Source of the DNA: Octopus sinensis
Lineage: Eukaryota
Reading direction: 5' to 3'
DNA length: 64,000 nt
Assembly: GCF_006345805.1 (NCBI RefSeq)
Contig: NC_043010.1
Coordinates: 6,014,001-6,078,000, forward strand
The position numbers and the translations under genes were made by a program. The notes under the pieces were generated by a model. That model was not told the DNA's origin. It did no database searches and saw only the letters and a program-made list of their open reading frames with translations. Shown one piece after another: positions 248 through 60,719 of this stretch (positions are counted from its first letter, which is position 1; each line of letters begins with the position of its first letter).

Positions 248-3200
248 TTAGACGTCTGTTGCAGACAGGGGAGGAAGTGGAGGTACCTGGGGTGATGAAG
301 GTACCTTCGGTAGTGTTGTTATTTTGGGTACAGCTGGCAGAGATGGTTTACAGTCTGAAGTAAACTGACTTTTCACTGGTACTGTAGAATGTTGTCCAGT
401 TATGTTAGATGTGATCCCAGTAATAGTCAAAGGTGTTTGGTCAATCGAACAGGAAGTGTTATTATCGACATTAGGTTGATGGTGATATCCATATTTGTTA
501 TCTCCCCTTGATCTGTTGAGTGTGTTTTGAAGTTGATTTCTCCTATTCCATGTCTGGTCACTTTGGTAACGGCACAGATCTAAAAAATAATGAGTTTGTA
601 TATGAATTTACTTTGCAATCAACAATTAACCTCATTAACATTTCTTTCGGGCATAAAATTATTCTCCATCTGTGCAGGTTTGCTTGCAAATTTTTAATTT
701 CTAAGAAACAACTTGATAATTTATTGATAACGAAGAAGATAATTAAATTCAGATAATTAACATTCTCATTTTTAATTAGGGATTAGTCTTGAAAACGAAT
801 TTTCCAAGAAAAATACATGTAAAGAAATTTTAATAGAACATTTTATACAATCAATATCTTAACCCCTATTTCTGAAAGTGTTACAAATGGACAATAATCA
901 TTAATTTGAAATTAAATCATAGTCCTTTTTATTTGGAGACTGGTGGAATGAAAGCTCCCTTGTTTGAAAAGCATTCAATGGATTAGTTACAGAAAGAGCC
1001 TCTAGGTGTAAAGCACTGCCTTAATATTCTACTCATCTGACTGATGCTAGCATAAGAAAAATGAACGTAAAAGGAATGAACAAACTAAATTAAATATATG
1101 TATTACGCTCTCATTAGGAAATATATTAAATTTAAAAGTTTCTTACAACTGAAGAAATGCTTGGTAATTTTATCTTACCTGGCAGTTCCTCATAATGTCC
1201 AGCACTACCGACACTCCAGCCTTGACCACTATCAGTGTGAGATGACAATGTTGACATCTCACTGAATTGGTCAGGATTGTTCAGTTCTCTGTAACCTGGA
1301 GACATACTTTCCTCTCTGGGAATAAAAATCTATAAATATAAACCCAATGGATCATCAAGATGTTCTGAACGTTCAAAAAAAGAAATATATCTCAAAGATT
1401 TAGACAATTCTAAGGAATTTTAATCATTGTATACTCTAAGTTCTAAACTTTCTGAAGTCTACAAGTAATTTCCTAGAAAGATGACCTCAAAACATCAGTC
1501 AGAATATATATAGGTAATTTTTAGTATATTGTATTTACTCTGTCTCCAGGATATCTTCATCATCGCCATCTCAGAGTGCTATGACTTTTGAGTTTATAAT
1601 ATTCAAAGAAGCTTCAATTAGTAAGAAATAATCATATATTAATTTAGTTGCTCCAGTAAGCTAAGGATATGAACAATAACAAGCAGAGGTAATAATTCAA
1701 TTTGAAAACAGCAGTCGAGTTTCAAACTAACTTTTCAAATTGTATCTGACAGTTTATTAGTATTACCCTAGTAACATAGGAAAACTATTCTACAGGTGAA
1801 AATAGCAGACCTGTTTTATTCATGTCTAATGATGACTGCAATTGTACAGATAAGATTAGCAATTGTCTAAAATACTGTGTATATAACATTCCTCCAACCA
1901 TAAAGATTGCACGTGTCAATAAATATTTGTTACTTCTCAATTTCCTTTGCAGCATTCACATGAAGTTTTTCTAGGAATACCCAAAATTGAAAAGAATGCA
2001 AAAATACATTTGGAAAAGATTGATGAACAATAAAGGGAATGATTTAAATGTAAAATAGTGAGAGTGGTCATCATCATCATTGAACATCAGTTCTCCATGC
2101 TGACATGGGATGGAGAGTAGGACAGGAGTTAGCTAGCTTGAGAGCTGTCCATGCTTCATCTCCCTATTTTTCTATAGTTTCTATGAAGGGATGCATTTCC
2201 TAACACCAACCACTTAACATGGTGGGTGCTTTTATATGGCCCCAACATGGGAACTGTTACGTAAAACCTCTATAGGCAATTTTACATGAAGCATGCAACA
2301 GCTATTTTTTCCTTGATATTTCAAATAAATATAAGCAATTTACCTGTTCAGGTCTGTTCAAAGTAAAATCGTTCCACTTATCACATGGCATGGTTCTGCA
2401 GTAAGTATCTTCCCTATAAACCTTTGATTCTTGAGATGGCTTCAGTTTTCTCGACATCGTGTACGAAATGCCAGGTGGAACACAGGTAGGATCAAATATA
2501 TATTTTGATTGTACGTTTAATGCAGGTGTAACCTTGTGGTACATATCAACACTGTTGTTATAGTTGCTGTCTGTCTGCTTCAGTCTATGAACTATACAGA
2601 TTGATATAGAGATCACTATGACAACTGATACGATCACAGCTGCTATAACAATAACAATCATCACATTCAATTGGAGACCATTACTTGATTCTGTTGTTGT
2701 CTTTGAAGGGGTCTTAAATATCTTTGATGTGGTGTTACTAACTGTGAGAGTCAAAGACAAAGTTGTTGTCGATGACAGAACTGGACTGCCACTGTCTTTC
2801 ACACCTAATTCCAGTTCATAGAATCCAGCATCATTTTGGTAAAGTGAGCGAGAGAAAGATAAGACACCAGAGTGATGGTTCATTTGAAATAAGTGTTTCT
2901 CATTACCTCTGAGTATTTCATATGTGAGGAAGGCATTGTGTTGGCTGTCTCTGTCAGAGGCCCTAACAACTGTGATATCCTGGTCAGAGTGGGGATGGTA
3001 GTGGACATTAAGAGTGAAAGGGTCAACATTAGGGAAACTGAAATAGGGAGCATTATCATTTAAATCCATAACCTCAACAACAACATTTGCTCTCTTCTCC
3101 AGTGATGGTGTTCCTTTATCTTTTACTAAAACCTTAAACTCATACAGGTTCTTTTCTTCTCTGTCTAGGGACTCAGTTGTGGAAATGAATCCCACATCAG

Positions 3201-4731
3201 ATATCTGAAATGGTAGAATATCTTTTCCATTAGATAATAGAGAATAGGTTAATTGTCCTCCATCTCCAATATCTGGGTCTGTGGCATTGACATAGCCAAC
3301 AGGGAAGTCTTTGTGTTCATTTTCATAGGTGAGAAACTTAAATATGTCCTGACTAAACTGAGGTTGTACATCATTTATGTCAGTGACCAGCACAGAAAAC
3401 TGTTTCTCTACTTTCAATGGAGGTAAACCATTATCTTGACATTTAATGGTGAAATTAAAGCTCTTCTCACTCTCTCTATCTATTTCACTCTTGACAACAA
3501 CTTTGTAATTCTTTTCAGACTCTGCGATAAGCTGAAGATATCTATTTTGTAAATGACACTTCACTTGTCCATTTTTTCCACTGTCATTGTCAATAGCATT
3601 GACAAAAGCAACAAAACTGTGAATTAAAGTTCCTTCTGAGATGACTGCTGTGTTTCCAGTCGACTTGAAGACAAATTTGACATCAATTTTGGGAGGATTG
3701 TTAAGATGACTGATTCCAGTTACAAGAACAGTTGCAGTTGAGGACATTGGTGGGTTACCATTATCCCTTGCTTCAACAAACAATTTATATATCCTTCCAA
3801 ATTGAAATTCTTTCTTCAGAAACAAATATCCAGTTACTTCATCTAATCTGAAAAACTGTTCAGTATATTTTGATGTTATGGCATTGAAAAAATAAGATAT
3901 TAATCCATTTTCTCCTTCATCTAAATCCGTAGCCAACAGCTTTGCAATCGGTTTGTTTAACTGGTGTGTGTCATTTACAGTGACATTATAAGTATTTTGA
4001 GAGAACACAGGGAAATTATCATTAATATCTTTAATAATTATTTTTATATGAAGTACACCTTCTTTCTGTGGTGACCCATTATCTCTGGCAATAAGCTGAA
4101 TATCGTAAATGCTTTTTGTCTCACGATCTAAGACATTTTCAAGGTTTAGTTGCAATAAATCAGATCCATCCAATTTTTTAGAAACAATCAATTTAAAAGG
4201 AGTATTTAAATTTTCAATCTCATATGTAATTTTGGAATTCTGAATACTGACATCATTATCAATGGCATTTGGAATTATATGCCTGGTTCCTATTAGAACG
4301 CTTTCATCAAATTTTAAATGAAATTCCTTTTTTGGAAACTTTGGAGAATTATCATTAACATCTTCTATTATAACTTTGAGTTTTAATATCTTAATAACAG
4401 AATAGCCATGTTGAACAGTTATTTCCAATATTCTGAAACATTCCACATTATATTGACACAGAATTTCTGCATCCAATATGGCAGCAGTGTACAAGTGTCC
4501 TCCCTGTGTAACATTAAATAACTGGTCTGTTTCATCAGAACTTCTCTGAAGTACATTAAACATCAGTTTGCTGTTATCGTCAAGAGATGGTACAGTATCC
4601 AATAAGTGTGTATCAGTGACAATATCTCCAATAAAGCTGTGTATATCATTGTTCTCTTTCACATGGTAGGTATGATCCACACACCAACAATTGTTAACCA
4701 TTAACAACACCAACCAAAGTATGTATAACAT
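248..4731 (-). CDS. Pcdh: Protocadherin gene 1 (6 EC + TM + cytoplasmic tail), about 956 aa; coding exons 4731-2344, 1329-1179, 579-248
   Basis: Signal peptide, EC1 C-X5-C motif (LCQYNVEC), DxNDN/DRE/DxD cadherin motifs and a hydrophobic TM helix. Donor CAG|GTAAAT at 2344/2343; 151-nt exon TAG|ATT...CCAG|GTAAGA; acceptor TTTAG|ATCTG at 579. Phases 0 and 1 keep the frame open to the stop at 248. Symbol is family-level only. Confidence 0.93.
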
Positions 4732-6720
4732 GGTTACAGTCTACAATTCTGTTACAAGGAAATATATGTATAATGTTATTGAAACCTATGAAATAATGAC
4801 TTCTGGAATATTTTCTTCTGTTATCACCTGTAAACATATGAAACATAAAAGCTAATTATGCATTAACAAAGATGAAGTAATCTAGAAAATTCACATCACT
4901 GAAAACTGGTAGCAATACAAAATTTTACCAACATATTACAAGGTACGCAAAAAAAATCTACATTATCGTTCCATTCTTTATCTTTATATGCATTTGATAG
5001 AATTTAAAGTTATTTTCCTCCTACACATTTAAGTTATGTTTTAGTGTGAAAAAATATTACATCAATTGTATAATCTCACCCTTGTAACAAACATTTCTTA
5101 AATTTTCATCATTTCAAGATCCTAATTTATACTTCAAATAAAAGAAGGAAGCATATTAACATATGTTTGACTGGTCTACATCTGTTAATTTATCTTCAAT
5201 TCTCATTTTGTGTACTAAGAAATGAAGCCTACACTGACAATTAATGAACCTTTTCCAAATATCAGTCAAATCTCCCTCAAATCACAAACTATCATAATAT
5301 TTAAGAAGGGGACATATTGGATAATGTATATCAAAGTCCAGCATGGCACAAGACAAGAAGATATGATTATTATGGTTAGAACTGCCTTTGATTATTGATC
5401 TATCCAATTAGAAACAACAGGAGATTTAAATTTTGATTGGCAGTCAAGTAATATATGATTAGCTTTTCCACTGAAATCATGTTTCTATACATTATCCACA
5501 ATCAGTCTGATTAATAAATGATAAAAGCATTTTTCAGCAATAAATTCATAATCACATTATGATAAGCAGTAAGTTTTGTAGTCTGAAGAATATCCAGTTC
5601 AGCTTTTCAGCAATTTGCTGTAGAAAGAAAAACTTAATTTTTGTTGTAACATTCTAAAAGCACAATATGCTATGGGGTTTACTTTTTCTGTGGCCGTGTG
5701 TTTACCGTTGGCTATTTTCTTTCTCCGTCTTCCCTTCCTTGGACCTTTCCTTTTTCTATGTTTCTGATGAAGAGCTCCGCTTGAAATGTTGAATACTCCA
5801 TCTTTCATTTCTTTCCTAAGTGTCGAAGAACTCTGTACTTGTTCCACGTCCTCGCGTTGATGTCTTTTCTCTTTATTCATTTTTGGAGTAACTATATATA
5901 TATATATATATACACAAATAGAAATTTCTATCGGTTTGTTTTGAGACGCATAAATTATAATGGTTATTGACAATTTTTGTCTTTTTTTCGGTATATTTGG
6001 CATTAGAATTTTTCTTTTGCCCTTATTTTTGTACATTATTTATAAATTTAACCTTTAAAGGTATTTTTTGATATGCTGGCCAGTGGTGTTGTTTAACTGA
6101 ATAGCATCTTTGTTCTCCATCATCCCATAACTAAACTCAATACTCAATATGCATCAGGAAGACAAGTTGAAATGAATGTTCCTGAGTCACAATCTGTAAT
6201 TCACTATTTGATGAAAAGGAAGTAAAAGATAAAACTAACAGAACACTAACTAAAGGAGTTGTTGCCCTTTGATTCTGACCTAAAAATAACAAAAAACAAA
6301 TAATGTCTGCCTAACAGTCTAAGCTGAACAAAATAATTTCCTTCATCACATCTCCCTTCTAATTACTAATATTTAGCATCATTCTCACATTAAACATTTG
6401 CCAATCTAATCACAATTAAACAATCAGTAATTTAGTGATTCCCTGGAACAGTAAAATTACAAATTTTAAAATTTAGTAAAATTATATCTTTCCTAAAATT
6501 TACCATTCTAGACGGTCTTTGAGAAATAATATTTATATTTTAGATTTGATGAATGGAAATCATGACAAGGTACAAATATCTGTGAAAAATTCTAACAATA
6601 AGTAAACTTACTCTATTTTTACATCCTGTCTGTAACAGTAGAATGAACTTTTGATTAAATAAAAGATTTGAAAAATATACAAAAGATTACACAACAGAAT
6701 AAGTTCTAATAAGTACTTAC

Positions 6721-6960
6721 CAACAGGTATCAGTTATTTATATAGTTGTTGCTGTGCTGTTTCAGGGTTTTGGTAACAAAGTTATATCAGTAGCAGAAGT
6801 TCTGAGTAGTTTGGTATGTGACAGTGTTATGTAGTTCTATGGAGTTGGTTGTGTAGTGTGTAATGTGTGTTGTAGCCAATGACAAGCTGTCTTTTATTCC
6901 AGTGCAAGGAAACGGAAATACAGCCTCCAACTTTTGCAGTTAATGATGGACTGACTCACA
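6721..6960 (-). promoter_or_regulatory. Conserved promoter cassette + non-coding leader exon of gene 1 (donor GTTG|GTAAGT at 6721/6720)
   Basis: Plus strand reads agCCAATgacaagctgtcttttattccagtgcaaGGAAacGGAAatacagcctccaacttttgcagt...TGACTCA (6952-6958). The same block recurs upstream of all six genes and ends in a consensus 5' splice site. TSS not determinable. Confidence 0.8.
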
Positions 6961-8025
6961 GACTGGTTTACTTAACCCACACCCACTTACATATATATGT
7001 GAATGTGTGTTAGTACATAAATGAATAAGGAAGAAATGTCTAATGACTAGAATGAAGTGGACAGGCAATAAATTCAGTATGGAAAATATTGATTCAAAAT
7101 AATGTTAATATAAATGTGTAAAAGTATAAGGAACCTAACTTTAGTAACTTTATGTTACAAACTGCACATAACTCTCAGAAAAGTTATCATGGAACCAAAA
7201 TAAAATTGATTCATATAAAAAATAAATATTTGGAAATATTATTATATTAATACAATAAAACAGCAGTTGAATCATAGAGAAAATTTTTTTAGAAAATACG
7301 AAACTAAGGCTATCAATAAACTTATTTCTGTTCAGCAGAAATGTGTGAAGTAAAACACTGAAGAACAGCAGAATAAGAGAATGAGCAGAAAGAATGATAT
7401 TTACCAAACCTTTTGCATTTGTTAGGTTAAAGGGGTTTACTTCATTTTGGATTTCATAGATTTCCTCAGAATTAATAATAATAATATTGAAGAATTTCAT
7501 AAAGAACAGAAGTGGAAGGCAACTACTAATAGATATAACTTCTACAAACTACCATAGTAAAATATTCTGTAAATCTCAGATTTTCTAACAAAACATTAAC
7601 ATCTTGGAGCCTTCGGAGTGAACACTGATAGCATTACACAATATAAATATAAGATTATTAAGATTTTGCTATTTCAGAAATGGATTTGCAGAGAAGTTAG
7701 AATGTTGAATAAAATGTTTGCCGTATTTAGTTACAAATTATTATGCACTGTGCTAAAATTGCTCTGAGATTAGATTTATTTTATCAATACAATAAATGAA
7801 ATTAAATACAAACCAAATAATTCGGTTGATTTACTGTAAATTAAAATCTAAAAACAGAATCTGAAAACTAACAGAAACTAATGAATGAAACATTATTGAT
7901 GCGTGTTCTACTATGAAATGAAATATTGTTTTGTTATTAATATTTTCTTTTAATGTATTCCTTACTGGAAATGTATTGCCTGTCTTGAGAAAATAATGCT
8001 TTGTTATGTTCTTGAAATGATGCTA

Positions 8026-11000
8026 TTAGACGTCTGTTGCAGACAGAGGAGGGAGTGGAGGTACCTGGGGTGATGAAGGTACCTTTGGTAGTGTTGTTAT
8101 TTTGGGTACAGCTGGCAGAGATGGTTTACAGTCTGAAGTAAACTGACTTTTCACTGGTACTGTAGAATGTTGTCCAGTTATGTTAGATGTGGTCCCAGTA
8201 ATAGTCAAAGGTGTTTGGTCAATCGAACAGGAAGTGTTATTATCGACATTAGGGTGATGGTGATATCCATATTTGTTATCTCCCCTTGATCTGTTGAGTG
8301 TGTTTTGAAGTTGATTTCTTCTATTCCATGTCTGGTCACTTTGGTAACGACACAGATCTAGAAAAAATATTAAGATTTTATATAAATTTATTTGCAATAA
8401 AAAAATTAAGCATTTGTTTCATGCATAAAATTATCCCAAATCTATGCAGGTTTACTCAAAACTTTGAATTTTTAATGAACAACTTGATAATTTATTGATA
8501 ATGAAGAATTTAATTAAATTCAGATGTTTTTCATTTTAACATTCTCATTTTTAATTAGGGATTAGTCTTCAGAAGGAGTTTTGGAAGAATAATATATGTG
8601 AATAAATTTCACGAGAACATTATATATATTGAATAGCTTGACCTATATCTTTTTAAAGATTTGCAAATGGACACTAATCATTAATTTATAATTAAATTTT
8701 AGTCGTGTATCTATGGAGATTGGTGGAATGAAAGCTTCCTAACTTGAAAATTAATGAATGGGTGAACAACAGAAAGAGCCACGAGGTGTAAAGCATTGCC
8801 TTAATATTTTACTCATCTGATTCATGCTAACATACGCAAAATGAATGTAAAACGAATGAACAAACTAGATATGTATTATTATATCATTAGGAAATATAAT
8901 ATTAAATTTAAAAGTTTCTTACATCTGAAGAAATTCTTGGTATTTTTATCTTACCTGGCAGTTCCTCATAATGTCCAGCACTACCAACACTCCAGCCATG
9001 ACCACTATCAGTGTGAGATGACAATGTTGACATCTCACTGAATTGGTCAGGATTGTTCAGTTCTCTGTAACCTGGAGACATACTTTCCTCTCTGGGAATA
9101 AAAATCTATAAATATAAACCCAATGGATCATCAAGATGTTCTGAACGTTCAAAAAAAGAAATATATCTCAAAGATTTAGACAATTCTAAGGAACCTTCAG
9201 TTGGGATGTTCATTTCTAATCATTGTATACTTTAAATTCTAAACTTTCTGAAGTCTTCAAGTAATTTCCTAGAAAGATGACCTCAAAACATCAGTCAGAA
9301 TATATATATAGGTAATCTTTAGTATATTTATTTACTCTGTCTCCAGGATATCTTAATCATCGCCATCTCAGAGTGCTATGACTTTTGAGTTTATAATATT
9401 CAAAGAAGCTTCAATTAGAAAGAAATAATCATATATTAATTTAGTTGCTCCAGTAAGCTAAGGATATGAACAATAACAAGCAGAGGTAATAATTCAATAT
9501 GAAATCAGCAGTCGAGTTTCAAACTAACTTTTCAAATTGTATCTGACAGTTTATTAGTATTACCCTAGTAACATAGGAAAACTATTCTACAGGTGAAAAT
9601 AGCAGACCTGTTTTATTCATGTCTAATGATGACTGCAATTGTACAGATAAGATTAGCAAGTGTCTAAAATACTGTGTATATAACATTCCTCCAACCATAA
9701 AGATTGTACATGTCAATAAATATTTGTTACTTCTTAATTCCCTATGCAGCATTCAGAAGATATTCTTCTAGGAATACCCAAAATTGAAAATAATGCAAAA
9801 ATACATTTGGAAAAGATTGATGAACAATAAAGGGAATGATTTAAAGGTAAAATAGTGAGAGTGGTCATCATCATCTTTTAACATCAGTTCTCCATGCTGA
9901 CATGGGATGGAGAGTAGGACAGGAGTTAGCTAGCCTTAGAGCTGTTCATGCTTCATCTCCCTATTTTTCTATAGTTTCTATGAAGAGACGACCATCGTAA
10001 CACCAACCACTTAACATGGTGGGTGCTTTTATACGGCCCCAACATGGGAACTGTTACGTAAAACCTCTATAGGCAATTTTACATGAAGCATGCAACAGCC
10101 ATTTTTTCCTTGATATTTCAAATAAATATAAGCAATTTACCTGTTCATGTCTGTTCAAAGTAAAATCGTTCCACTTATCACATGGCAAGGTTCTGCAGTA
10201 AGTATCTTCCCTATAAACCTTTGAGTCTTGAGATGGCTTCAGTTTTCTCGACATTGTGTACTGAACTCCAGGAGGAACACAGGTAGGATCAAATATATAT
10301 TTCGATTGCGTGTTTAATGCAGGTGTAACCTTGTGGTACATATCAACACTGTTGTTATAGTTGTTGTCTGTCTGATTCAGTCTATGAACTATACAGATCG
10401 ATATAGAGATCACTATGACAACTGATACGATCACAGCTGCTATAACAATAACAATCATCACATTCAATTGGAGACCATTACTTGATTCTGTTGTTGTCTT
10501 TGAAGGGGTCTTAAATATCTTTGATGTGTTCTTACTAACTGTGAGAGTCAAAGACAAAGTTGTTGTCGATGACAGAACTGGACTGCCACTGTCTTTCACA
10601 CCTAATTCCAGTTCATAGAATCCAGCATCATTTTGGTAAAGTGAGCGAGAGAAAGATAAGACACCAGAGTGATGGTTCATTTGAAATAAGTGTTTCTCAT
10701 TACCTCTGAGTATTTCATATGTGAGGAAGGCATTGTGTTGACTGTCTCTGTCAGAGGCCCTAACAACTGTGATATCATGGTCAGAGTGGGGATGGTAGTG
10801 GACATTAAGACTGAAAGGGTCAACATTAGGGAAACTGAAATAGGGAGCATTATCATTTAAATCCATAACCTCAACAACAACATTTGCTCTCTTCTCCAGT
10901 GATGGTGTTCCTTTATCTTTTACTAAAACCTTAAACTCATACAAGTTCTTTTCTTCTCTGTCTAGGGACTCAGTTGTGGAAATGAATCCCACATCAGATA

Positions 11001-12528
11001 TCTGAAATGGTAGAATATCTTTTCCATTAGATAATAGAGAATAGGTTAATTGTCCTCCATCTCCAATATCTGGGTCTGTGGCATTGACATATCCAACAGG
11101 GAAGTCTTTGTGTTCATTTTCATAGGTGAGAAACTTAAATATGTCCTGACTAAACTGAGGTTGTACATCATTTATGTCAGTAACCAGCATTGAAAACTGT
11201 TTCTCTACTTTCAATGGAGGTAAACCCTTATCTTGACATTTAATGGTGAAATTAAAGCTCTTTTCTCTTTCTCTGTCTATTTTACTCTTGACAACAACTT
11301 TGTATTTCTTTTCAGACTCTGAGATTAGCTGAAGATATCTATTTTGTAAATGACACTTCACTTGTCCATTTTCTCCATTGTCATTGTCAATAACATTGAC
11401 ATAAGCAACAAAACTCTGAATTTGTGTTCCTTCAGAGATGACAGCTTTTTTTCCAGTTGACTTAACAAAAAATTTGAAGTCAATGTTTGGTGGATTATTC
11501 AAATGAGTGACACCATTTATAAGGACAATGGCTGTTGAAAACATAGGTATTTTACCATTATCTCTAGCTTCAACAAGCAATTTATATATCCTTCCAAATT
11601 GAAATTCTTTCTTTAGAAACAAATATCCAGTTACTTCATCTAATCTGAAACACTTCATGGCATATGTTGATGTTTTGCTATTGAAGACGTAAGATATTAA
11701 TCCATTTTCTCCTTCATCTAAATCTGTAGCCAACAGCTTTGCAATAGGTTTGTTTAACTGGTGTGTGTCATTTACAGTGACATTATAAGTATTTTGGGAG
11801 AACACAGGGAAATTATCATTAATATCTTTAATAATTATTTTTATATGAAGTACACCTTTTTTCTGTGGTGATCCATTATCTCTGGCATTTAGCTGAATTT
11901 CATAAATGCTTTTTGTCTCACGATCTAAGATATTTTCTAGATTGAGTTGCAATAAATCAGATCCATCCAATTTTTTAGAAACAATCAATTTAAAAGGAGT
12001 ATTTAAATTTTCAATCTCATATGTGATTCTGGAATTCTGAATACTGACATCATTATCAATGGCATTTGGAATTATTTGCTTGGTTCCTATTAGATCATTT
12101 TCATCAAATTTTAAATGAAATTCCTTTTTTGGAAATTTGGGGGAATTATCATTAACATCTTCTATTATAACTTTGAGTTTTAATATCTTAATAACAGAAT
12201 AGCCATGTTGAACAGTTATTTCCAATATTCTGAAACATTCCACATTATATTGACACAGAATTTCTGCATCCAATATGGCAGCAGTGTACAGTTGTCCTCC
12301 CTGTGTAACATTAAATAACTGAGCTGTTTCATCACTACTTCCCTGAACAACATTAAACATCAGTTTGCTGTTATCGTCAAGAGATGGTACAGTATCCAAT
12401 AAGTGTGTATCAGTGACAATATCTCCAATAAAGCTGTGTATATCATTGTTCTCTTTCACATGGTAGGTATGATCCACACACCAACAATTGTTAACCATTA
12501 ACAACACCAACCAAAGTATGTATAACAT
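8026..12528 (-). CDS. Pcdh: Protocadherin gene 2, about 956 aa; coding exons 12528-10141, 9105-8955, 8357-8026
   Basis: Close paralog of gene 1 with the same exon sizes (2388/151/332 nt), canonical GT-AG sites and an open frame. Confidence 0.93.
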
Positions 12529-19500: not shown

Positions 19501-21554
19501 TTACTTGATTCTGTTGTTGTCTTTGAAGGGGTCTTAAATATCTTTGATGTGGTGTTACTAACTGTTAGAGTCAAAGACAAAGTTGTTGTCGATGACAGAA
19601 CTGGACTGCCACTGTCTTTCACACCTAATTCCAGTTCATAGAATCCAGCATCATTTTGGTAAAGTGAGCGAGAGAAAGATAAGACACCAGAGTGATGGTT
19701 CATTTGAAATAAGTGTTTCTCATTACCTCTGAGTATTTCATATGTGAGGAAGGCATTGTGTTGACTGTCTCTGTCAGAGGCCCTAACAACTGTGATATCA
19801 TGGTCAGAGTGGGGATGGTAGTGGACATTAAGAGTGAAAGGGTCAACATTAGGGAAACTGAAATAGGGAGCATTATCATTTAAATCCATAACCTCAACAA
19901 CAACATTTGCTCTCTTCTCCAGTGATGGTGTTCCTTTATCTTTTACTAAAACCTTAAACTCATACAAGTTCTTTTCTTCTCTGTCTAGGGACTCAGTTGT
20001 GGAAATGAATCCCACATCAGATATCTGAAATGGTAGAATATCTTTTCCATTAGATAATAGAGAATAGGTTAATTGTCCTCCATCTCCAATATCTGGGTCT
20101 GTGGCATTGACATATCCAACAGGGAAGTCTTTGTGTTCATTTTCATAGGTGAGAAACTTAAATATGTCCTGACTAAACTGAGGTTGTACATCATTTATGT
20201 CAGTAACCAGCATAGAAAACTGTTTCTCTACTTTCAATGGAGGTAAACCATTATCTTGACATTTAATGGTGAAATTAAATCTCTTCTCACTCTCTCTATC
20301 TATTTCACTCTTGACAACAACTTTGTATGTCTTTCCAGACATTGAAATAAGCTGAAGATATCTATTTTGTAAATGGCACTTCACTTGTCCATTTACTCCA
20401 TTGTCATTGTCAATAACTTTGACAAAAGCAACAAAACTGCCAATTTTAGATGCTTCTGAGATGACAGCTGTGTTTCCAGTTGACTTAATGACAAATTTGA
20501 AGTCAATGTTTGGTGGATTGTTAAGATGACTGACACCATTTACCAGAACAGTAGCTCTTGAAATTCTGCGAGGAATACCATTATCTTTGGCTTCAATAAA
20601 TAATTTATATAATTTTCCAAACTTATATTCTTTTGTCATAAATAATTCTCCAGTTACTTTATCTAATCTGAACAGAGTTTTAATCTTTTCTGGTGTTTTA
20701 GAACTGATTATGTATGAAATTCTCCCATTCTCTCCCTCATCCATGTCTGTAGCAGAAAAATTTAATATAGGTTTGTTTATTTGGTATGTATCATTTACAT
20801 TTATATTGTAGGTACTCTGAGAGAATACAGGTGAGTTATCATTTTTATCTTTCACTAAGATATTTATATCCATTACACCTTCCTTTGGTGGTGTTCCACC
20901 ATCTGTAGCAACTAGTTGGATATGATAATTAGATTTTGTCTCTCGGTCTAGATTCTTTTCCAGAACTAGCTCAAGTAAATTAGTTTCACTTAAATCTTGT
21001 GATAAGACCAATTTAAAAGGAATATCTTCATCCTCTTTCAATTTATAATTGATCTTTGTGTTCTGAATACTGACATCTTTGTCAATGGCATTTGGAAGTG
21101 TTTCTTTTCTTCCTTTTGCTGCACTTTCATCAAACTGTATATTAAATTCTTTGTTTGGGAAAATGGGAGAATTATCATTGGCATCTTCTATCATAACTTT
21201 GATTTCCAATATTTTGAGAAAAGAATGGCCATGCTGAACTGCGATTTCCAATACCCTGAAGCATACCACATTATATTGACAAAGAATTTCTGCATCCAAT
21301 ATGGCAGCTGTGTGCAGTTGTCCTCCAGGTGTAACATTAAACAACTGAACACTTCCATCTGTATTACCCTGAAGTACTTTAAATTTCAGTTTGTTGCTAT
21401 TATCCTGAGACTGTATATTATCCAGTAAGTGTGTATCAGTGACAATATCTCCAATATAACTGTTTAAATCATTGTTCTCTTTCACATGATAAATATGATC
21501 CACACACCAGGAGCTCTCAGCCATCAACAGCACCAACAATACCATTGACAACAT
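16531..21554 (-). CDS. Pcdh: Protocadherin gene 3, about 957 aa; coding exons 21554-19164, 17642-17492, 16862-16531
   Basis: Acceptor TTTCAG|ATT at 21588 places the likely start at ATG 21554 (MLSMVLLVLL signal peptide), not 21656. Donor CAG|GTGAGT at 19164; 151-nt exon; terminal exon nearly identical to those of genes 1 and 2. Confidence 0.92.
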
Positions 21555-21777
21555 GACTACAATCTTCAATTGTCTTTGATATATTAATCTGAAATGGAAA
21601 TAGATATATAGAGGATAACATCCAATATACAGAATATATCTAGATATTGCTTCCATACCAATACATCATAATTTATGTCAAAATATCAATTACCATCATT
21701 AAGTAGCATAAATTCTTGCAAAATTTTTTCTTATTGATCAGTGACAATGAGAATTGTGAAAATTTGATTACCAACTG

Positions 21778-33100: not shown

Positions 33101-35408
33101 GAGATTTCTTCACATTTCTCTCCAATGTGTACTGAACTCCAGGAGGAACACAAGCAGGATAAAACATATATCTTGATTGCATATTTAATGCTGGTATAAC
33201 ACCATGGTACATATCAACACTACTATTATAGTTTCTATTTGTCTGCTTCAACCTATGAACTATACAGATTGATATAGAGATCACTATGACAACTGATACG
33301 ATCACAGCTGCTACAACAATAACAATCATCACATTCAATTGGAGACCATTACTTGATTCTGTTGTTGTCTTTGAAGGGGTCTTAAATATCTTTGATGTGT
33401 TCTTACTAACTGTGAGAGTCAAAGACAAAGTTGTTGTCGATGACAGAACTGGACTGCCACTGTCTTTCACACCTAATTCCAGTTCATAGAATCCAGCATC
33501 ATTTTGGTAAAGTGAGCGAGAGAAAGATAAGACACCAGAGTGATGGTTCATTTGAAATAAGTGTTTCTCATTACCTCTGAGTATTTCATATGTGAGGAAG
33601 GCATTGTGTTGGCTGTCTCTGTCAGAGGCCCTAACAACTGTGATATCCTGGTCAGAGTGGGGATGGTAGTGGACATTAAGACTGAAAGGGTCAACATTAG
33701 GGAAACTGAAATAGGGAGCATTATCATTTAAATCCATAACCTCAACAACAACATTTGCTCTCTTCTCCAGTGATGGTGTTCCTTTATCTTTTACTAAAAC
33801 CTTAAACTCATACAGGTTCTTTTCTTCTCTGTCTAGGGACTCAGTTGTGGAAATGAATCCCACATCAGATATCTGAAATGGTAGAATATCTTTTCCATTA
33901 GATAATAGAGAATAGGTTAATTGTCCTCCATCTCCAATATCTGGGTCTGTGGCATTGACATATCCAACAGGGAAGTCTTTGTGTTCATTTTCATAGGTGA
34001 GAAACTTAAATATGTCCTGACTAAACTGAGGTTGTACATCATTTATGTCAGTGACCAGCATAGAAAACTGTTTCTCTACTTTCAATGGAGGTAAACCATT
34101 ATCTTGACATTTAATGGTGAAATTAAAGCTCTTCTCACTCTCTCTATCTATTTCACTCTTGACAATAATTTTGTATTTCTTTTCAGACTCTGAGATTAGC
34201 TGAAGATATCTATTTTGTAAATGACATTTCACTTGTCCATTTTCTCCACTGTCATTGTCGGTAACTTTGACATAAGCAACAAAACTTTGATTTTGAGTTC
34301 CTTCTGAGATGACAGCTGTGTTTCCAGTTGACTTTATAACAAATTTAACATCAATTTTGGGAGGATTGTTAAGATGACTGACACCATTTATAAAAACTGT
34401 GACTGTTGATGACATAGGTGGTTTACCATTATCTCTGGCATCAATAAATATCTCGTAAATCTCACCAAAATTAAATTCTTTCTTCAAAAATAGCTCCCCT
34501 GTTGCCTCCTCTAATTTAAAGCTTTCTTTTATCCTTTTAGGTGTTTTAACATTATTAAAGACATAAGAAATTCTTCCATTTTCCCCTTTATCTAAGTCTG
34601 ATGCAGAGACCTTAACAAGAGGCTTGCTTCTCTGGTATGTATCATTTATAGTGACATTGTAAATATTCTGGGAGAAAACAGGAAAATTATCATTTTTATC
34701 TCCCACTAATATTTTTATATCCAATACACCTTCCTTTGGTGGTGTTCCTTGATCTTTGGCAATTAACTGAATATTGTACATATCTTTTGTCTCACGGTCT
34801 AAGGAACCTTCTAAAATTAGTTGCAATAAATCAGTTCCACGTGACTTAGAAACAACCAATTGAAAAGGAACATTTTCATTTTCCTTCAGTTGATAATTGA
34901 GTTTAGAATTCCGAGAGCTAATATCGTTATCAATCGCATTTGGAATGATTTCTTTGATTCCTTTGGTCACACTTTCATCAAATGACACTTGAAATTCCTT
35001 ATTTGGAAATATAGGAGAATTATCATTGACATCTTCTATTATAACTTTGACTTCTAATATCTTGATAACAGAATGGCCATGTTGAACTGCTACTTCCAAA
35101 ATCCTGAAGCATTCCACATTGTATTGGCACAATGTTTCTGCATCCAATATGGCAGCTGTGTACAGTTGTCCTCCAGGTGTAACATTAAACAACTGAACAC
35201 TTCCATCAGTACTACCCTGGAGTATTTTAAATGTCAGTTTGCTTCTATCATCTTGAGTCTGTATATCATCCAGTAAGTGCATATCAGTGACAATATCTCC
35301 AATATAATTGTTTATATCATTGTTCTCTTTCATGCGGTAGATATGATACGCACACCAGCAGCTTTCAGTCATTAACAACACCAACAGTATCACTGATAAC
35401 ATCTTCAT
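30139..35408 (-). CDS. Pcdh: Protocadherin gene 4, about 960 aa; coding exons 35408-33012, 32502-32352, 30473-30139
   Basis: Acceptor TTTCAG|ATT at 35427. The ORF-track start at 35426 is TTG; the first ATG is at 35408 (MKMLSVILLVLL). Donors CAG|GTGAGA and CAG|GTTAGT; acceptor TTCCAG|GT at 30473; frame open. Confidence 0.92.
31660..32323 (+). mobile_element. CR1/L2-clade LINE 3' fragment with (ATT)n tail
   Basis: Translates RPHLEFASPVWNPYLAQDINHLEAIQ...YSERL...FRKHFFTLRVAEAWNKL, with stops, and ends in attattatt. Confidence 0.8.
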
Positions 35409-48037: not shown

Positions 48038-51000
48038 TTAATGTTCATTGTCTCCAGTATATATCTACAAAATTACTATCTCTTGACACAGACTACTATA
48101 ACTGTTGAATTGGCAATGATTAAAAAAACTTAGATAAAGAAGAAAATAAGACTCATATCAAATAATTTAGCTTGCCAAGTTCAATGAGGATATGAATAAC
48201 ACTGTGTAACAAAATTTTAAATTTTTTCTGTCTTTGGTCATTAATTATTATATCCTAATTGCTTCTATCTAGAAATCAAATGAAATGACTATTCCCTTCA
48301 AACTTTGCTTTTGACATCAATGTTTTCAAACGCACTGATTTTCCATTACATTTCAGACACATTCTTCACTGAGTGGCTGAAACAGAAATATCTTTACAGC
48401 AAATGTTCTGCTCAATACCACAGGTTTGCTTCTCAGTTGTTTGGCCTTGACCGCTTGAGCATATCTCTTAGTGGCATATCTCGTATTCAATATATATTTG
48501 TAGGTTCTGAATTTCTATTGCAGCTCTTACATGGTGTGATTTAATAGTAATACAAGTGAATATCGGTAAAGATTGTAGTCAGAGAAATGGTGGATGATGT
48601 CTAAGAAGATATACTACTATAGGGGATCACTTGATTGAGTGGTGACTTACTGAAATCGAAGAGGTTGATCTATTTATAACATCATTTACTACAGCTTCAA
48701 AATTTTTAGTAATCTTTAAACGCTACATAGAGATTACTGTCTTTGGTTGGAACAAAACTAAGATCTGCAAAAGCAACTGTGTTTAAGGAAGATTATCTAG
48801 AAACCATTTCTGCAATTGAATCTCAGATTTTGAGGTTCAAACTTCATCAAGGTAAAAGTATATGTTACTTTGAATATATCTTTACATTTTAAAGGCAAAA
48901 TTCTGTTTTTAATCTGTACAGAAGAAGCTGCATTTGAAATGATTAAAAATTAATATGCAAAATGACAAACATTTCATCTTACCTGATTGTTTTCTCTTGA
49001 AGCCTGATCATTCCATCTATAAGACATAGTTCTGCAGTGAATATTGTCTCTGTCTACCATTGGTTGTTGAAATTTTTCACATTTCTCTCCATTGTGTACT
49101 GAACTCCAGGAGGAACACAGGTAGGGTCAAATGTATACTTTGGTTGGATGTTTAATGTAGGTGTAACCTTGTGGTACATATCAACACTGTTGTTATAGTT
49201 GCTGTCTGTCTGCTTCAGTCTATGAACTATACAGATTGATATAGAGATCACTATAACAACTGATACGATCACAGCTGCTATAACAATAACAATCATCACA
49301 TTCAATTGGAGACCATTACTTGATTCTGTTGTTGTCTTTGAAGGGGCCTTAAATATCTTTGATGTGGTGTTACTAACTGTTAGAGTCAAAGACAAAGTTG
49401 TTGTCGATGACAGAACTGGACTGCCACTGTCTTTCACACCTAATTCCAGTTCATAGAATCCAGCATCATTTTGGTAAGTGAGCGAGAGAAAGATAAGACA
49501 CCAGAGTGATGGTTCATTTGAAATAAGTGTTTCTCATTACCTCTGAGTATTTCATATGTGAGGAAGGCATTGTGTTGGCTGTCTCTGTCAGAGGCCCTAA
49601 CAACTGTGATATCCTGGTCAGAGTGGGGATGGTAGTGGACATTAAGACTGAAAGGGTCAACATTAGGGAAACTGAAATAGGGAGCATTATCATTTAAATC
49701 CATAACCTCAACAACAACATTTGCTCTCTTCTCCAGTGATGGTGTTCCTTTATCTTTTACTAAAACCTTAAACTCATACACGTTCTTTTCTTCTCTGTCT
49801 AGGGACTCAGTTGTGGAAATGAATCCCACATCAGATATCTGAAATGGTAGAATATCTTTTCCATTAGATAATAGAGAATAGGTTAATTGTCCTCCGTCTC
49901 CAATATCTGGGTCTGTGGCATTGACATATCCAACAGGGAAGTCTTTGTGTTCATTTTCATAGGTGAGAAACTTAAATATGTCCTGACTAAACTGAGGTTG
50001 TACATCATTTATGTCAGTAACCAACACAGAAAACTGTTTCTCTACTTTCAATGGAGGTAAACCATTATCTTGACATTTAATGGTGAAATTAAAGCTCTTC
50101 TCACTCTCTCTATCTATTTCACTCTTGACAACAACTTTGTATTTCTCTGCAGATACTAAGATTAGCTGAAGGTATCTGTTTTGTAAATGACACTTCACTT
50201 GTCCATTTACTCCACTGTCATTGTCAGTAACTTTGACATAAGCAACAAAACTGCCAATTTTAGATGCTTCTGAGATTACTGTTTTGTTTCCTGCTGACTT
50301 TAAGATAAATTTTACATGGATTTTTGGTGGATTATTAAGGTAACTGATCCCTTTAATAAGGATGGTGGCTGTTGAAGACATAGGTATTTTTCCATTATCT
50401 GTGGCTTCAACTAACAATTTATGGATTTTTCCAAATTCAAATTCTTTCTTCACAAATAATTCTCCAGATGTCTGATTTAAAATAAAGAATTTCTTATCTT
50501 TATCTAAGGTGTCAGGACTGAATGTATATAGAATTTGTCCATTCGTACCCTGATCTACATCTGTAGCAGTTAAATTCAAAATAGGTTTATGCAAATTCTG
50601 TGTATCTTTTACTGTGACATTATAAATACTTTGGGAGAATACAGGTGCATTGTCATTCTTATCTCTTACTAAAATATGGATGGCCATATCTGCTTGTTTT
50701 GGAGGAGATCCCCCATCTGTAGCCATTAGAAGAAGATCATAATTTTTCTTCATTTCTCTGTCTAGTTTTCCATTCAGAATTAATTCTATTTTACTTTTCC
50801 GGTCAGAAATTTTTATTACCATTAATTGGAAAGTTTTATTAATATTATTCCTCAGTTCATAAGAAAGCTTTGAGTTCTGAATACTGACATCTTTGTCAAT
50901 GGCATTTAGAATTATTTCTTTTGTTCCTTTCAAATCATTTTCATCAAACTGTATATTAAAGTCTTTGTTGGGAAAAATGGGATAATTATCATTAACATCT

Positions 51001-58900: not shown

Positions 58901-60719
58901 ATGTGAGGAAGGCATTGTGTTGGCTGTCTCTGTCAGAGGCCCTAACAACTGTGATATCCTGGTCAGAGTGGGGATGGTAGTGGACATTAAGACTGAAAGG
59001 GTCAACATTAGGGAAACTGAAATAGGGAGCATTATCATTTAAATCCATAACCTCAACAACAACATTTGCTCTCTTCTCCAGTGATGGTGTTCCTTTATCT
59101 TTTACTAAAACCTTAAACTCATACAGGTTCTTTTCTTCTCTGTCTAGGGACTCAGTTGTGGAAATGAATCCCACATCAGATATCTGAAATGGTAGAATAT
59201 CTTTTCCATTAGATAATAGAGAATAGGTTAATTGTCCTCCGTCTCCAATATCTGGGTCTGTGGCATTGACATATCCAACAGGGAAGTCTTTGTGTTCATT
59301 TTCATAGGTGAGAAACTTAAATATGTCCTGACTAAACTGAGGTTGTACATCATTTATGTCAGTAACCAGCACAGAAAACTGTTTCTCTACTTTCAATGGA
59401 GGTAAACCATTATCTTGACATTTAATGGTGAAATTAAAGCTCTTTTCTCTTTCTCTATCTATTTCACTCTTGACAACAACTTTGTATTTCTTTTCAGACA
59501 CTGAGATTAGCTGAAGATATCTGTTTTGTAAATGACACTTCACTTGTCCATTTTTTCCACCGTCATTGTCGGTAACTTTGACATAAGCAACAAAACTGCC
59601 AATTTTAGATGCTTCTGAGATGAAAGCTGTGTTTCCAGTTGACTTTATAACAAATTTGATATCAATGTTTGGTGGATTGTTAATGTGACTGATTCCATTT
59701 ATTAGAATGGGAACTGTTGAAGACATTGAAGGAATACCATTATCTCTGGCTTCAACAAATAATTTATAAATTCTTCCAAACTGAAATTTTTGCTTCAGAA
59801 ACAACTCTCCTGTTGCTTCATCCAACTTAAAGCATTCTTTTATTTTATTTGGTGTTTTGGCATTACTAAAGATATAAGAAATTCTTCCACTTTCTCCTTC
59901 ATCTAAATCTGTTGCAGACAACCTCAGAATAGGTTTGTTTATTCTGTGCGTACCATTTACAGTAACATTGTAGATATTTTGCGAGAAAACAGGGGAGTTA
60001 TCATTTTTATCTTCTACCAATATTTGTATATGAAATATACTTTCCTTTGGTGGTGATCCTCCATCTCTGGCAATTAATAGTATATTATATACATCTTTTT
60101 TCTCACGATCCAAGTTACTTTCCAAAATTAGTTGTAATAAATCAATTCCATCTGATTTCTTAGAAACAAACAATTTGAAAGGAATATCTTCATCTGCTTT
60201 CAGTTGATAAGAGAGTTTAGAATTCTGAACACTGAAATCTTTGTCAATAGCATTGGGAAGTGTTTCTGTCGTTCCTATCAAATCATTTTCATCAAATTGT
60301 ATTTTAAGTTCCTTTTTTGGAAATATAGGATAATTATCATTGACATCTTCTATCATAACTTTGATTTCTAATATCTTCATAAAAGAATGGCCTTCTTGAA
60401 CTGCTATTTCCAATATCCTGAAACATTCCACATTATACTGACAAAGAATTTCTGCATCCAATATGGAAGCTGTGTACAGTTGTCCTCCAGGTGTAACATT
60501 AAACAACTGAACACTTCCGTCAGTAACACCCTGGATAACATTAAATGTCAGTTTGTCGCTGTTATCCTGGGACTGTATATTATCCATTAAGTGTGTATCA
60601 GTGACAATATCTCCAATATAACTGTGTACATCATTGTTCTCTTTCACATGGTAGGTATGGTCCACACAAAGGCAGCTCTCAGCCAACAACAACAGCATCA
60701 ACATTAATACTGGAAACAT
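55998..60719 (-). CDS. Pcdh: Protocadherin gene 6, about 943 aa; coding exons 60719-58344, 56748-56598, 56302-55998
   Basis: Acceptor TTTCAG|ATT at 60726, ATG at 60719, donor CAG|GTAAAA at 58344, a 151-nt exon and a terminal exon starting DLCRYQ; frame open. Confidence 0.92.
56925..57140 (+). mobile_element. SINE-like family C (related: head at ~26503-26575, minus-strand copy at ~36130-36310)
   Basis: Shared gagctggcagaa head and gcctttcatcctttc.gggtcgataaattaagtacc core across the copies. Confidence 0.55.
57753..58151 (+). mobile_element. SINE family A, full copy
   Basis: Same head, body and tail. Confidence 0.8.

What the first reader, a model, noticed from the sequence alone, without database searches (positions are those of the whole stretch)
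3690..4010. EC3-EC4 linker has lost its calcium-binding motifs in all six paralogs
Seen: EC3 lacks the xE motif (VTVNDTH/INVNDTY/VNGTH), lacks DRE (KEFQF, KEYKF, KEFNF, KEFEF, QKFQF), and the DxNDN linker reads (H/Y)(L/I)NNPP. The DxD and xD ligands on EC4 remain, and the other linkers are largely canonical. Established: Ca2+-free cadherin linkers, as in Drosophila N-cadherin EC2-3 and PCDH15 EC9-10, produce bent or flexible ectodomains. Inference: these proteins have a hinge exactly between the variable and homogenised halves, implying a trans-binding geometry different from the extended antiparallel EC1-EC4 interface of vertebrate clustered Pcdhs.
Basis: partly seen in the sequence, partly recalled or inferred. 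Interest (0 to 1): 0.72.

Follow-up and report, generated by a model that had tools for sequence, protein, structure and literature searches.

The report
Calcium-poor EC3-EC4 joint in octopus protocadherins
Six tandem octopus protocadherin genes lack most of the usual calcium-binding residues at the joint between their third and fourth cadherin repeats, and all 241 octopus, argonaut and cuttlefish-type protocadherins examined share this, so the trait is old and family-wide and probably makes a softer, one-calcium joint where vertebrate protocadherins have a stiff three-calcium one.

Summary
The window is Octopus sinensis CM016872.1. It holds six minus-strand protocadherin genes, each with six EC repeats and a TM segment in one large exon. 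The finding's coordinates are EC3 of the first gene.

HMMER alignment to solved vertebrate protocadherins fixes the register:
- xEx Glu becomes Asp (5/6) or Gly.
- DRE becomes E-x-Q/K/N/E or K-x-Q.

The EC4-side ligands (DxD, Asn, xDx) are intact, and the other four linkers are canonical.

The trait is not special to these six genes. All 241 cephalopod protocadherins surveyed have a non-canonical EC3-EC4 linker. The D103-equivalent is Asn in 241/241, and the usual motif is V-I-N-Q-Q-N-N-A-P. The EC4-side aspartates are essentially invariant, and the other linkers are about 100% canonical.

The closest precedent is PCDH15 EC5-6, a "partial Ca2+-free" linker with one Ca2+ at site 3 and variable orientation.

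AlphaFold models were inconclusive on geometry. The inferred "different trans geometry" is untested. Synonymous divergence does fall most steeply at this joint, but gradually.

The parts
2302..4731 (-). Paralog W1: large first exon ORF encoding signal peptide, EC1-EC6, TM and start of the cytoplasmic tail
   Evidence: ORF list and translation. Pfam Cadherin x5 plus Cadherin_2. Best PDB matches are protocadherin ectodomains.
3691..4011 (-). W1 EC3 (residues 241-347), the stretch named in the finding
   Evidence: Coordinates computed. Register from HMMER alignments to 6vg1, 6e6b, 6vg4 and 6pgw.
3967..3975 (-). W1 N253-D254-T255. D254 sits where the xEx glutamate (Glu-11) should be. N-D-T is also an N-glycosylation sequon.
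   Evidence: Alignment to vertebrate M-E-D and P-E-N. The sequon is in 15/25 subfamily members against 1/216 elsewhere.
3802..3810 (-). W1 E308-F309-Q310 in place of D-R-E
   Evidence: Aligned to D-F-E, D-Y-E and D-H-E of vertebrate Pcdhs. These columns are hypervariable family-wide, with entropy of 3.0 and 3.5 bits.
3691..3711 (-). W1 linker S341-H342-L343-N344-N345-P346-P347 in place of D-x-N-D-N-A-P
   Evidence: HMMER register. N344 and P347 are invariant in 241/241.
3583..3591 (-). W1 EC4 D381-N382-D383 (DxD motif, retained)
   Evidence: D381 241/241 and D383 234/241.
3433..3435 (-). W1 EC4 D433 (xDx motif, retained), next to invariant C431
   Evidence: D433 241/241 and C431 241/241.
11488..11508 (-). 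W2 EC3-EC4 linker T-H-L-N-N-P-P
   Evidence: W2 is 99.9% identical to O. sinensis P0153.
20511..20531 (-). W3 EC3-EC4 linker S-H-L-N-N-P-P
34359..34379 (-). W4 EC3-EC4 linker S-H-L-N-N-P-P
50325..50345 (-). W5 EC3-EC4 linker S-Y-L-N-N-P-P. This paralog keeps D, E-x-E on the EC3 side.
59670..59690 (-). W6 EC3-EC4 linker S-H-I-N-N-P-P. This paralog has Gly at the xEx position and K-F-Q at DRE, the most depleted of the six.

Best explanation
The EC3-EC4 junction of these six Octopus sinensis protocadherins is a 'partial Ca2+-free' cadherin linker. The same holds for coleoid cephalopod protocadherins in general.

The ligands from the base of EC3 and from the linker peptide normally build Ca2+ sites 1 and 2. 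They have been replaced by neutral or variable residues. The ligands at the top of EC4 build site 3, and they are strictly conserved.

The most likely consequence is that only one Ca2+ is bound, at site 3. It anchors the linker to EC4. EC3 is no longer clamped to EC4, so this is the most compliant joint in an otherwise stiff six-repeat rod.

Shown: the sequence pattern, its register, its family-wide conservation, purifying selection on EC3, and the position of the gene-conversion gradient.

Inferred by analogy with PCDH15 EC5-6: the ion count and the flexibility. Both remain untested here.
For: Register and motif loss: HMMER alignments to four solved vertebrate Pcdhs.

Family-wide pattern, 126 plus 115 sequences:
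- The Glu-11 position is E in only 3 of 241.
- The DRE positions have entropy of 3.0 and 3.5 bits.
- The D100 position is N or S in 231/241.
- The D103 position is N in 241/241.
- On the EC4 side, D381 is 241/241, D383 is 234/241, N387 is 236/238 and D433 is 241/241.
- The other four linkers are about 100% canonical.

Among the five EC3 and linker positions that are normally acidic, 174 of 216 non-subfamily proteins have none.

Precedent with the same pattern: PCDH15 EC5-6 has a modified XEX, no DRE, DXNDN changed to PPNNQ, and DXD/XDX of the next repeat kept. Crystals show one Ca2+ at site 3 and three different orientations (PMC7547225).

EC3 is under purifying selection, dN/dS 0.22, so this is not decay.

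AlphaFold:
- Repeat folds are confident (pLDDT 91 for EC3-4), but interdomain confidence is low (pTM 0.59).
- The EC3-4 model fits every solved vertebrate Pcdh EC3-4 pair only at TMq 0.50-0.64, rmsd 5.2-7.4 A.
- In the full ectodomain model pLDDT dips to 69 at this linker, against 85-89 at EC1-2, EC4-5 and EC5-6.
Against: - No ion occupancy or flexibility was measured. AlphaFold does not model ions, I had no coordinates to measure an angle, and I could not run a control on a canonical repeat pair.
- In the full-length model the canonical EC2-3 linker also dips to pLDDT 69, so the dip is not specific.
- The full-length model fits vertebrate EC3-6 structures fairly well (TMt 0.73-0.77, rmsd 5.7-7.3 A). 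The EC3-4 junction in that model may therefore be close to canonical.
- In the window's own subfamily Asp and Glu sit at the Glu-11 and Asp-67 positions (21/25 and 18/25). With N344 and D383 they could keep a second site.
- The linker peptide itself is strongly conserved (N-V-I-N-Q-Q-N-N-A-P). That fits a defined structure better than a floppy tether.
Confidence: 0.6

Rival explanations
1. The linker still binds two or three Ca2+ through substitute ligands and stays essentially straight. Candidate ligands are Asp at the Glu-11 position, Glu at the Asp-67 position, the Asn/Gln amide oxygens of N341, Q343, N344 and N345, and the conserved D350. From my own knowledge, cephalopod blood Ca2+ is close to sea water at about 10 mM. 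That would help fill weakened sites.
For: - The window's subfamily has a length-swapped D/E pair at the Glu-11 and Asp-67 positions. W5 has D plus E-x-E.
- N344 is invariant and N345 and N341 are strongly conserved. D350 is conserved in 189/241.
- PCDH15 EC2-3 and EC3-4 bind two ions with altered motifs.
- The full-length AlphaFold model matches vertebrate EC3-6 at TMt 0.73-0.77.
Against: - Most family members have no acidic residue at any of the five EC3 and linker positions. They often have Lys at the Asp-67 position (101/216).
- The EC3-side positions are hypervariable, which is not expected for working ligands.
- The same pattern in PCDH15 EC5-6 gives one ion only.
Confidence: 0.2
2. The linker is fully Ca2+-free and forms a fixed, sharply bent EC3-EC4 interface, as in Drosophila N-cadherin EC2-3 or PCDH15 EC9-10.
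For: - Sites 1 and 2 are clearly degraded.
- The conserved Asn/Gln-rich linker could form a hydrogen-bonded kink.
- The full-length AlphaFold model is not extended: rmsd is about 50 A to vertebrate EC1-4 and EC1-6 structures.
Against: - Fully Ca2+-free linkers have also lost DXD and XDX on the following repeat (PCDH15 EC9-10: AIN and DSL; PMC5120219). Here these are invariant.
- The residues at the base of EC3 that would form a fixed interface are hypervariable.
- The two-repeat model differs from canonical pairs by rmsd 5-7 A. By my rough estimate that is about 25-30 degrees, not a right angle.
- The place of the large bend in the full-length model could not be determined, and it may lie at EC2-3.
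Confidence: 0.15
3. Artefact: the domain register is wrong, or these are decaying pseudogenes, so the 'loss' has no meaning.
For: W5 carries a one-base deletion that shifts the frame late in EC6.
Against: - Independent HMMER alignments to several solved Pcdhs agree on the register, with no indel at the linker.
- dN/dS is 0.22 in EC3.
- W2 equals an annotated O. sinensis protein.
- The same pattern occurs in 241 proteins from at least five named species.
Confidence: 0.03

Closest known systems
PCDH15 EC5-6 'partial Ca2+-free' linker (Choudhary et al. 2020, PMC7547225)
   Same: - The base of the first repeat has a modified XEX and no DRE.
- The linker peptide has Asn/Gln instead of Asp (PPNNQ, against N-Q-Q-N-N or S-H-L-N-N here).
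- DXD and XDX at the top of the next repeat are kept.
   Different: - PCDH15 is an 11-repeat tip-link cadherin under tension, with several atypical linkers. Here it is the single atypical linker of a 6-repeat protocadherin.
- Ion count and flexibility are measured for PCDH15 and only inferred here.
- The cephalopod linker peptide is itself highly conserved.
Ca2+-free bent linkers: Drosophila N-cadherin EC2-3 and PCDH15 EC9-10 (PMC5120219)
   Same: Loss of the ligands contributed by the first repeat and by the linker peptide.
   Different: - Those linkers have also lost DXD and XDX on the second repeat.
- They have a dedicated conserved interface, with bends of about 80-90 degrees.
- Here the EC4 ligands are invariant and the EC3 base is hypervariable.
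Vertebrate clustered and delta protocadherin EC3-EC4 linker (e.g. 6vg1, 6e6b, 6vg4, 6pgw; PCDH1, PMC6769022)
   Same: Homologous position in a homologous six- or seven-repeat ectodomain, with the same linker length and about 30% sequence identity.
   Different: Vertebrate proteins have canonical xEx, D(R/Y/F)E and DxNDN here, with three Ca2+ ions in each of EC1-2, EC2-3 and EC3-4. The cephalopod proteins do not.
Cephalopod protocadherin expansion (Albertin et al. 2022, PMC9068888; Styfhals et al. 2019, PMC6339937)
   Same: The window is part of the tandem array on the protocadherin-rich chromosome. These are whole-gene duplicates with their own 3' exons, homogenised by gene conversion.
   Different: The papers I could read do not discuss Ca2+-binding motifs or linkers. 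'Calcium' and 'linker' have zero occurrences in PMC6339937 and PMC9795677. I did not search PMC9068888 for these terms.

Membership tests
Protocadherin (cadherin superfamily, clustered/delta-like) | Tandem EC repeats of the cadherin fold followed by one TM helix | tested here: met
   Pfam Cadherin x5 (E 4.6e-70) plus Cadherin_2 for EC1. Best PDB sequence matches are Pcdh8.1, gammaB4 and Pcdh10 ectodomains. AlphaFold models are all-beta repeats that match Pcdh structures.
Protocadherin (cadherin superfamily, clustered/delta-like) | Whole ectodomain and TM encoded by one large exon, genes in a head-to-tail array | tested here: met
   Six uninterrupted ORFs of 659-850 aa on the minus strand. Short 3' exons follow each gene.
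Vertebrate-type clustered protocadherin locus | Variable first exons spliced to shared constant exons | tested here: not met
   Each paralog is followed by its own copies of the two 3' exons. This agrees with PMC9068888.
Canonical three-Ca2+ cadherin linker | xEx, DRE and DxNDN on repeat n, with DxD and xDx on repeat n+1 | tested here: not met
   EC3-4: xEx Glu, DRE and both Asp of DxNDN are absent in all six paralogs and in 241/241 relatives. The other four linkers meet the definition.
Partial Ca2+-free linker (PCDH15 EC5-6 type) | Ligands of repeat n and of the linker peptide degraded; DxD and xDx of repeat n+1 retained | tested here: met
   compared with the description in PMC7547225.
Partial Ca2+-free linker (PCDH15 EC5-6 type) | One Ca2+ bound at site 3 | not testable with these tools
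   Needs a structure or a titration. AlphaFold2 does not place ions.
Partial Ca2+-free linker (PCDH15 EC5-6 type) | Variable inter-repeat orientation | tested here: inconclusive
   - EC3-4 model: pLDDT 91 but pTM 0.59, TMq 0.50-0.64 to all vertebrate EC3-4 pairs.
- No control pair could be run.
- No coordinates were available.
Fully Ca2+-free bent linker (DN-cadherin EC2-3, PCDH15 EC9-10 type) | Ligands lost on both repeats | tested here: not met
   D381, D383, N387 and D433 of EC4 are invariant or nearly so. PCDH15 EC10 has AIN and DSL instead.
Fully Ca2+-free bent linker (DN-cadherin EC2-3, PCDH15 EC9-10 type) | Fixed bend of about 80-90 degrees with a conserved inter-repeat interface | tested here: inconclusive
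   - The two-repeat model deviates only moderately from canonical pairs (rmsd 5-7 A).
- The full-length model is not extended, but the bend could not be located.
- EC3 base residues are hypervariable.

The most novel reading that the evidence does not exclude
All coleoid cephalopod protocadherins, hundreds of genes per genome, share a conserved Ca2+-depleted EC3-EC4 joint (N-V-I-N-Q-Q-N-N-A-P plus an intact site 3). It splits the ectodomain into an EC1-EC3 recognition module and an EC4-EC6 constant module. The cephalopod expansion would then use a recognition-unit architecture that differs from the rigid antiparallel EC1-EC4 dimer of vertebrates. That would be a second, structurally distinct solution to neuronal surface coding by protocadherins.
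Probability: 0.2. Interest if true: 0.8.

Novelty: new variant of a known kind. Interest (0 to 1): 0.55.

Why it matters
Vertebrate protocadherin recognition depends on a stiff, Ca2+-rigidified EC1-EC4 rod that pairs antiparallel. Cephalopods expanded the same family independently to hundreds of genes, and nothing is known about how their proteins bind.

A family-wide atypical joint in the middle of the recognition region is a concrete, testable structural difference. It says which fragment to crystallise (EC2-EC5). It gives a stoichiometry to test (one Ca2+ against three). It also bears on whether the convergent expansions share a binding mechanism.

I found no mention of it in the literature I could search. 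The key cephalopod cadherin papers (Albertin 2015; Wang and Ragsdale 2017) were not available to me.

Tried and rejected
- A homologue search with the EC3-EC4 fragment alone returned only two proteins. The profile of the six whole proteins worked.
- The exhaustive representative search was swamped by giant Fat-like cadherins, whose many repeats sum to high scores. Only one protocadherin was among the 150 listed, so it gave no survey and no outgroup.
- I could therefore not retrieve Nautilus, gastropod, bivalve or annelid protocadherins. The age of the trait beyond coleoids is unknown.
- The papers Albertin 2015 and Jin 2012 were not held.
- AlphaFold gave no coordinates, so no inter-repeat angle could be measured.
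- Misregistration was rejected.
- Pseudogene decay was rejected.
- I considered that Glu at position 255, one residue after the xEx position and present in 88/216 non-subfamily proteins, might be a shifted xEx glutamate. This cannot be decided from sequence. It does not apply to the six window genes, which have Thr there.

Full report
**What is in the window.** Six long ORFs lie head to tail on the minus strand: 2302-4731, 10054-12528, 19104-21656, 32919-35426, 49440-51419 and 58320-60719. I call them W1-W6. Positions below use W1 numbering.

- Each ORF encodes a signal peptide, six cadherin repeats and a TM helix. Pfam finds Cadherin five times plus Cadherin_2 for EC1.
- The best sequence matches among solved structures are protocadherin ectodomains: Xenopus Pcdh8.1 6vg1, gammaB4 6e6b and Pcdh10 6vg4.
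- W2 is 99.9% identical over residues 1-797 to the Octopus sinensis protein P0153.
- The genomic locus of P0153 is GCA_006345805.1, CM016872.1. It matches window 5026-15528 without a mismatch. The window is therefore O. sinensis.
- Each gene has its own two short 3' exons. These are whole-gene duplicates without shared constant exons, as reported for cephalopods (PMC9068888).

**The observation.** Window 3690-4010 on the minus strand is W1 residues 241-347, that is EC3 with the linker.

HMMER alignments to four solved vertebrate protocadherins give the register without any indel at the linker:

| Canonical motif | Vertebrate sequence aligned | Residues in W1-W6 |
|---|---|---|
| xEx glutamate | M-E-D, P-E-N | D254 in five paralogs, Gly in W6 |
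| D-x-E of DRE | D-F-E, D-Y-E, D-H-E | E-F-Q, E-Y-K, E-F-N, E-F-E, K-F-Q |
| D-x-N-D-N-A-P | V-I-D-V-N-D-N-A-P and similar | S/T-H/Y-L/I-N-N-P-P |

That changes nothing, because both aspartates are missing either way.

'Lost' is somewhat too strong for the EC3 side. Asp sits at the Glu position and Glu sits at the Asp position in five of six paralogs, and W5 has E-x-E.

On EC4 the ligands D381-x-D383, N387 and D433 are intact. The four other linkers are canonical.

**How widespread it is.** A profile of the six proteins retrieved 120 cephalopod protocadherins: O. sinensis, O. vulgaris, O. bimaculoides, Argonauta hians, one Acanthosepion pharaonis and some unnamed assemblies. A second search seeded with the cuttlefish protein added 115 more. 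These were mostly further A. pharaonis proteins and proteins of unnamed assemblies that are 56-77% identical to the cuttlefish protein, including ENA assembly ERZ21867824. Two long Octopus cadherin-like proteins, P0272 and P0276, were also among them.

In the joint alignment of 241 sequences:

- The ligand columns of EC1-2, EC2-3, EC4-5 and EC5-6 are about 100% canonical.
- EC3-4 is non-canonical in every sequence.
- The Glu-11 column is N, D, S, Y or H, and is E in only 3 sequences.
- The two DRE columns have entropy of 3.0 and 3.5 bits.
- The first Asp of DxNDN is N (185) or S (46).
- The fourth position (Asp-103) is Asn in 241/241.
- On the EC4 side, D381 is 241/241, D383 is 234/241, N387 is 236/238 and D433 is 241/241.

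The common motif is N-V-I-N-Q-Q-N-N-A/P-P-x-I-D. The H-L-N-N-P-P form belongs to a subfamily of about 23 octopod proteins, found in the three Octopus species and in Argonauta.

That subfamily is the least depleted of all. It has Asp at the Glu-11 position in 21/25 and Glu at the Asp-67 position in 18/25. Of the other 216 proteins, 174 have no acidic residue at any of the five EC3 and linker positions, and 101 have Lys at the Asp-67 position.

The trait is therefore old and family-wide in coleoids, not a feature of this array. I could not obtain non-cephalopod outgroups.

**What it most likely is.** Vertebrate clustered and delta protocadherins have three Ca2+ ions and canonical motifs at EC1-2, EC2-3 and EC3-4 (PMC6769022; alignments).

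The pattern here is first-repeat and linker ligands gone, second-repeat ligands kept. That is the pattern described for PCDH15 EC5-6:

- XEX is modified.
- DRE is absent.
- DXNDN is PPNNQ.
- DXD and XDX of EC6 are kept.
- Crystals show one Ca2+ at site 3 in three different orientations. The authors call this a partial Ca2+-free linker that flexes even at high Ca2+ (PMC7547225).

PCDH15 EC9-10 has also lost DXD and XDX (AIN, DSL) and has a dedicated interface with a bend of about 90 degrees. DN-cadherin EC2-3 is bent by about 80 degrees (PMC5120219).

My best explanation is a one-ion, compliant joint. I give it a confidence of about 0.6. The ion count and the flexibility are inferences by analogy.

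**Structure prediction.**

*Full ectodomain model.* This covered W1 residues 19-668 with 126 aligned sequences.
- Mean pLDDT is 82.9 and pTM is 0.48.
- pLDDT falls to 69 at the EC3-4 linker, but also at the canonical EC2-3 linker. It is 85-89 at the other three.
- Foldseek matches vertebrate EC3-6 structures at TMt 0.73-0.77, rmsd 5.7-7.3 A.
- It matches EC1-4 and EC1-6 structures only at TMt 0.42-0.55, rmsd about 50 A.
- The model is therefore not an extended rod. I could not tell where it bends.
- A fold-back at EC2-3 would bring EC1 next to EC4 and EC2 next to EC3. That would mimic an antiparallel dimer within one chain. This is my speculation.

*EC3-EC4 model.* This used 150 aligned sequences.
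- pLDDT is 91 but pTM is only 0.59.
- It fits every solved vertebrate EC3-4 pair at only TMq 0.50-0.64, rmsd 5.2-7.4 A.
- By a rough estimate of mine that corresponds to a difference in orientation of about 25-30 degrees.

No control pair could be run and no coordinates were returned. These results are compatible with an atypical, uncertain junction, but they do not prove it.

**The 'boundary' claim.** Mean pairwise nucleotide identity among the six genes changes along the protein as follows:

| Residues | Identity |
|---|---|
| 146-350 | 0.64-0.77 |
| 354-384 | 0.85 |
| 384-414 | 0.91 |
| 414-714 | at least 0.97 |

Synonymous divergence by region:

| Region | dS |
|---|---|
| EC1 | 0.34 |
| EC2 | 0.73 |
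| EC3 | 1.04 |
| EC4 N-half | 0.27 |
| EC4 C-half | 0.15 |
| EC5-EC6 | 0.016 |

- The steepest drop does coincide with the EC3-EC4 linker. The transition is graded, and complete homogenisation begins inside EC4.
- dN/dS is 0.22-0.60 throughout, so the variable repeats are functional.
- The linker trait is far older than this conversion tract. The coincidence may reflect a modular division into EC1-3 and EC4-6, but no causal link is shown.
- Variable EC2-EC3 with more conserved EC1 and EC4 is what I recall of closely related vertebrate isoforms that use the antiparallel EC1-EC4 dimer. The data therefore do not require a different trans geometry.

**Literature.** Full-text searches combined octopus or cephalopod, protocadherin, and calcium-binding, linker, Ca2+-free linker, crystal structure or AlphaFold. 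They found no paper that describes this feature. The octopus protocadherin papers I could read do not mention calcium or linkers. Albertin 2015, Wang and Ragsdale 2017 and Jin 2012 were not available, so prior mention cannot be excluded.

**Verdict.**
It is an atypical, Ca2+-depleted joint, best classed as a partial Ca2+-free linker.
- The hinge behaviour and any altered trans geometry remain to be tested.
- It is a new variant of a known kind, of moderate to good interest to cadherin structural biology and to cephalopod neurobiology.

Noticed in passing
window 49440-51419, deletion near 49477: Paralog W5 has a single-base deletion in a T run relative to W6 (CTCACTTTACC becomes CTCAC-TTACC). 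It shifts the frame late in EC6. The rest of the exon continues in another frame to about 49075. The O. vulgaris orthologue P0155 is intact here, so this is either a very young pseudogene or a homopolymer error in the assembly.
   Followed up: partly
window 27755-28197, 27138-27275, 25809-26093 (minus strand): A 5'-truncated seventh protocadherin copy. Only the TM and juxtamembrane end of the large exon is present, followed by its own two 3' exons. The long O. vulgaris isoform P0154 (1091 aa) matches both this set and the W4 set of 3' exons.
   Followed up: partly
window 251-580, 1168-1329, 8029-8358, 8944-9105, 16534-16863, 17493-17669, 30193-30480, 32353-32502, 46546-46809, 47458-47607, 56052-56303, 56599-56748: Each of the six genes has its own pair of short 3' exons for the cytoplasmic tail. 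There are no shared constant exons.
   Followed up: yes
all six genes, residues about 387-714 (W1: window about 2590-3570): There is a gene-conversion tract from mid-EC4 through EC5, EC6 and the TM helix. Nucleotide identity is 0.97-1.00 and dS is 0.016 in EC5-6, against 1.04 in EC3. EC1 also has a lowered dS of 0.34.
   Followed up: yes
W1 residues 253-255 (window 3967-3975) and the same position in W2, W3, W4 and W6: An N-x-T glycosylation sequon (N-D-T or N-G-T) overlaps the former xEx position at the base of EC3. It is in 15/25 members of this subfamily and 1/216 other cephalopod protocadherins. A glycan may sit at the Ca2+-depleted joint.
   Followed up: partly
W1 C392 and C431 (window about 3556-3558 and 3439-3441): A cysteine pair in EC4 is invariant in the cephalopod proteins. 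C431 lies two residues before the xDx aspartate. Xenopus Pcdh8.1 has only the first cysteine. This may be a cephalopod-specific disulfide next to site 3.
   Followed up: no
W1 D350 (window 3682-3684): An acidic residue three positions after the linker proline (P-x-I-D) is conserved in 189/241 cephalopod proteins. The vertebrate sequences aligned do not have it. It could be a substitute ligand.
   Followed up: no
window 43372-43752 (minus strand): An ORF with a GIY-YIG nuclease domain (Pfam E 2.5e-08) lies between W4 and W5. It is probably a remnant of a Penelope-like retroelement. The surrounding 36-46 kb is richer in G+C and has a strong skew.
   Followed up: partly
AlphaFold model of W1 residues 19-668: The full ectodomain model is not an extended rod (rmsd about 50 A to vertebrate EC1-4 and EC1-6 structures), although its EC3-6 part fits vertebrate EC3-6. 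The place of the bend could not be determined.
   Followed up: partly
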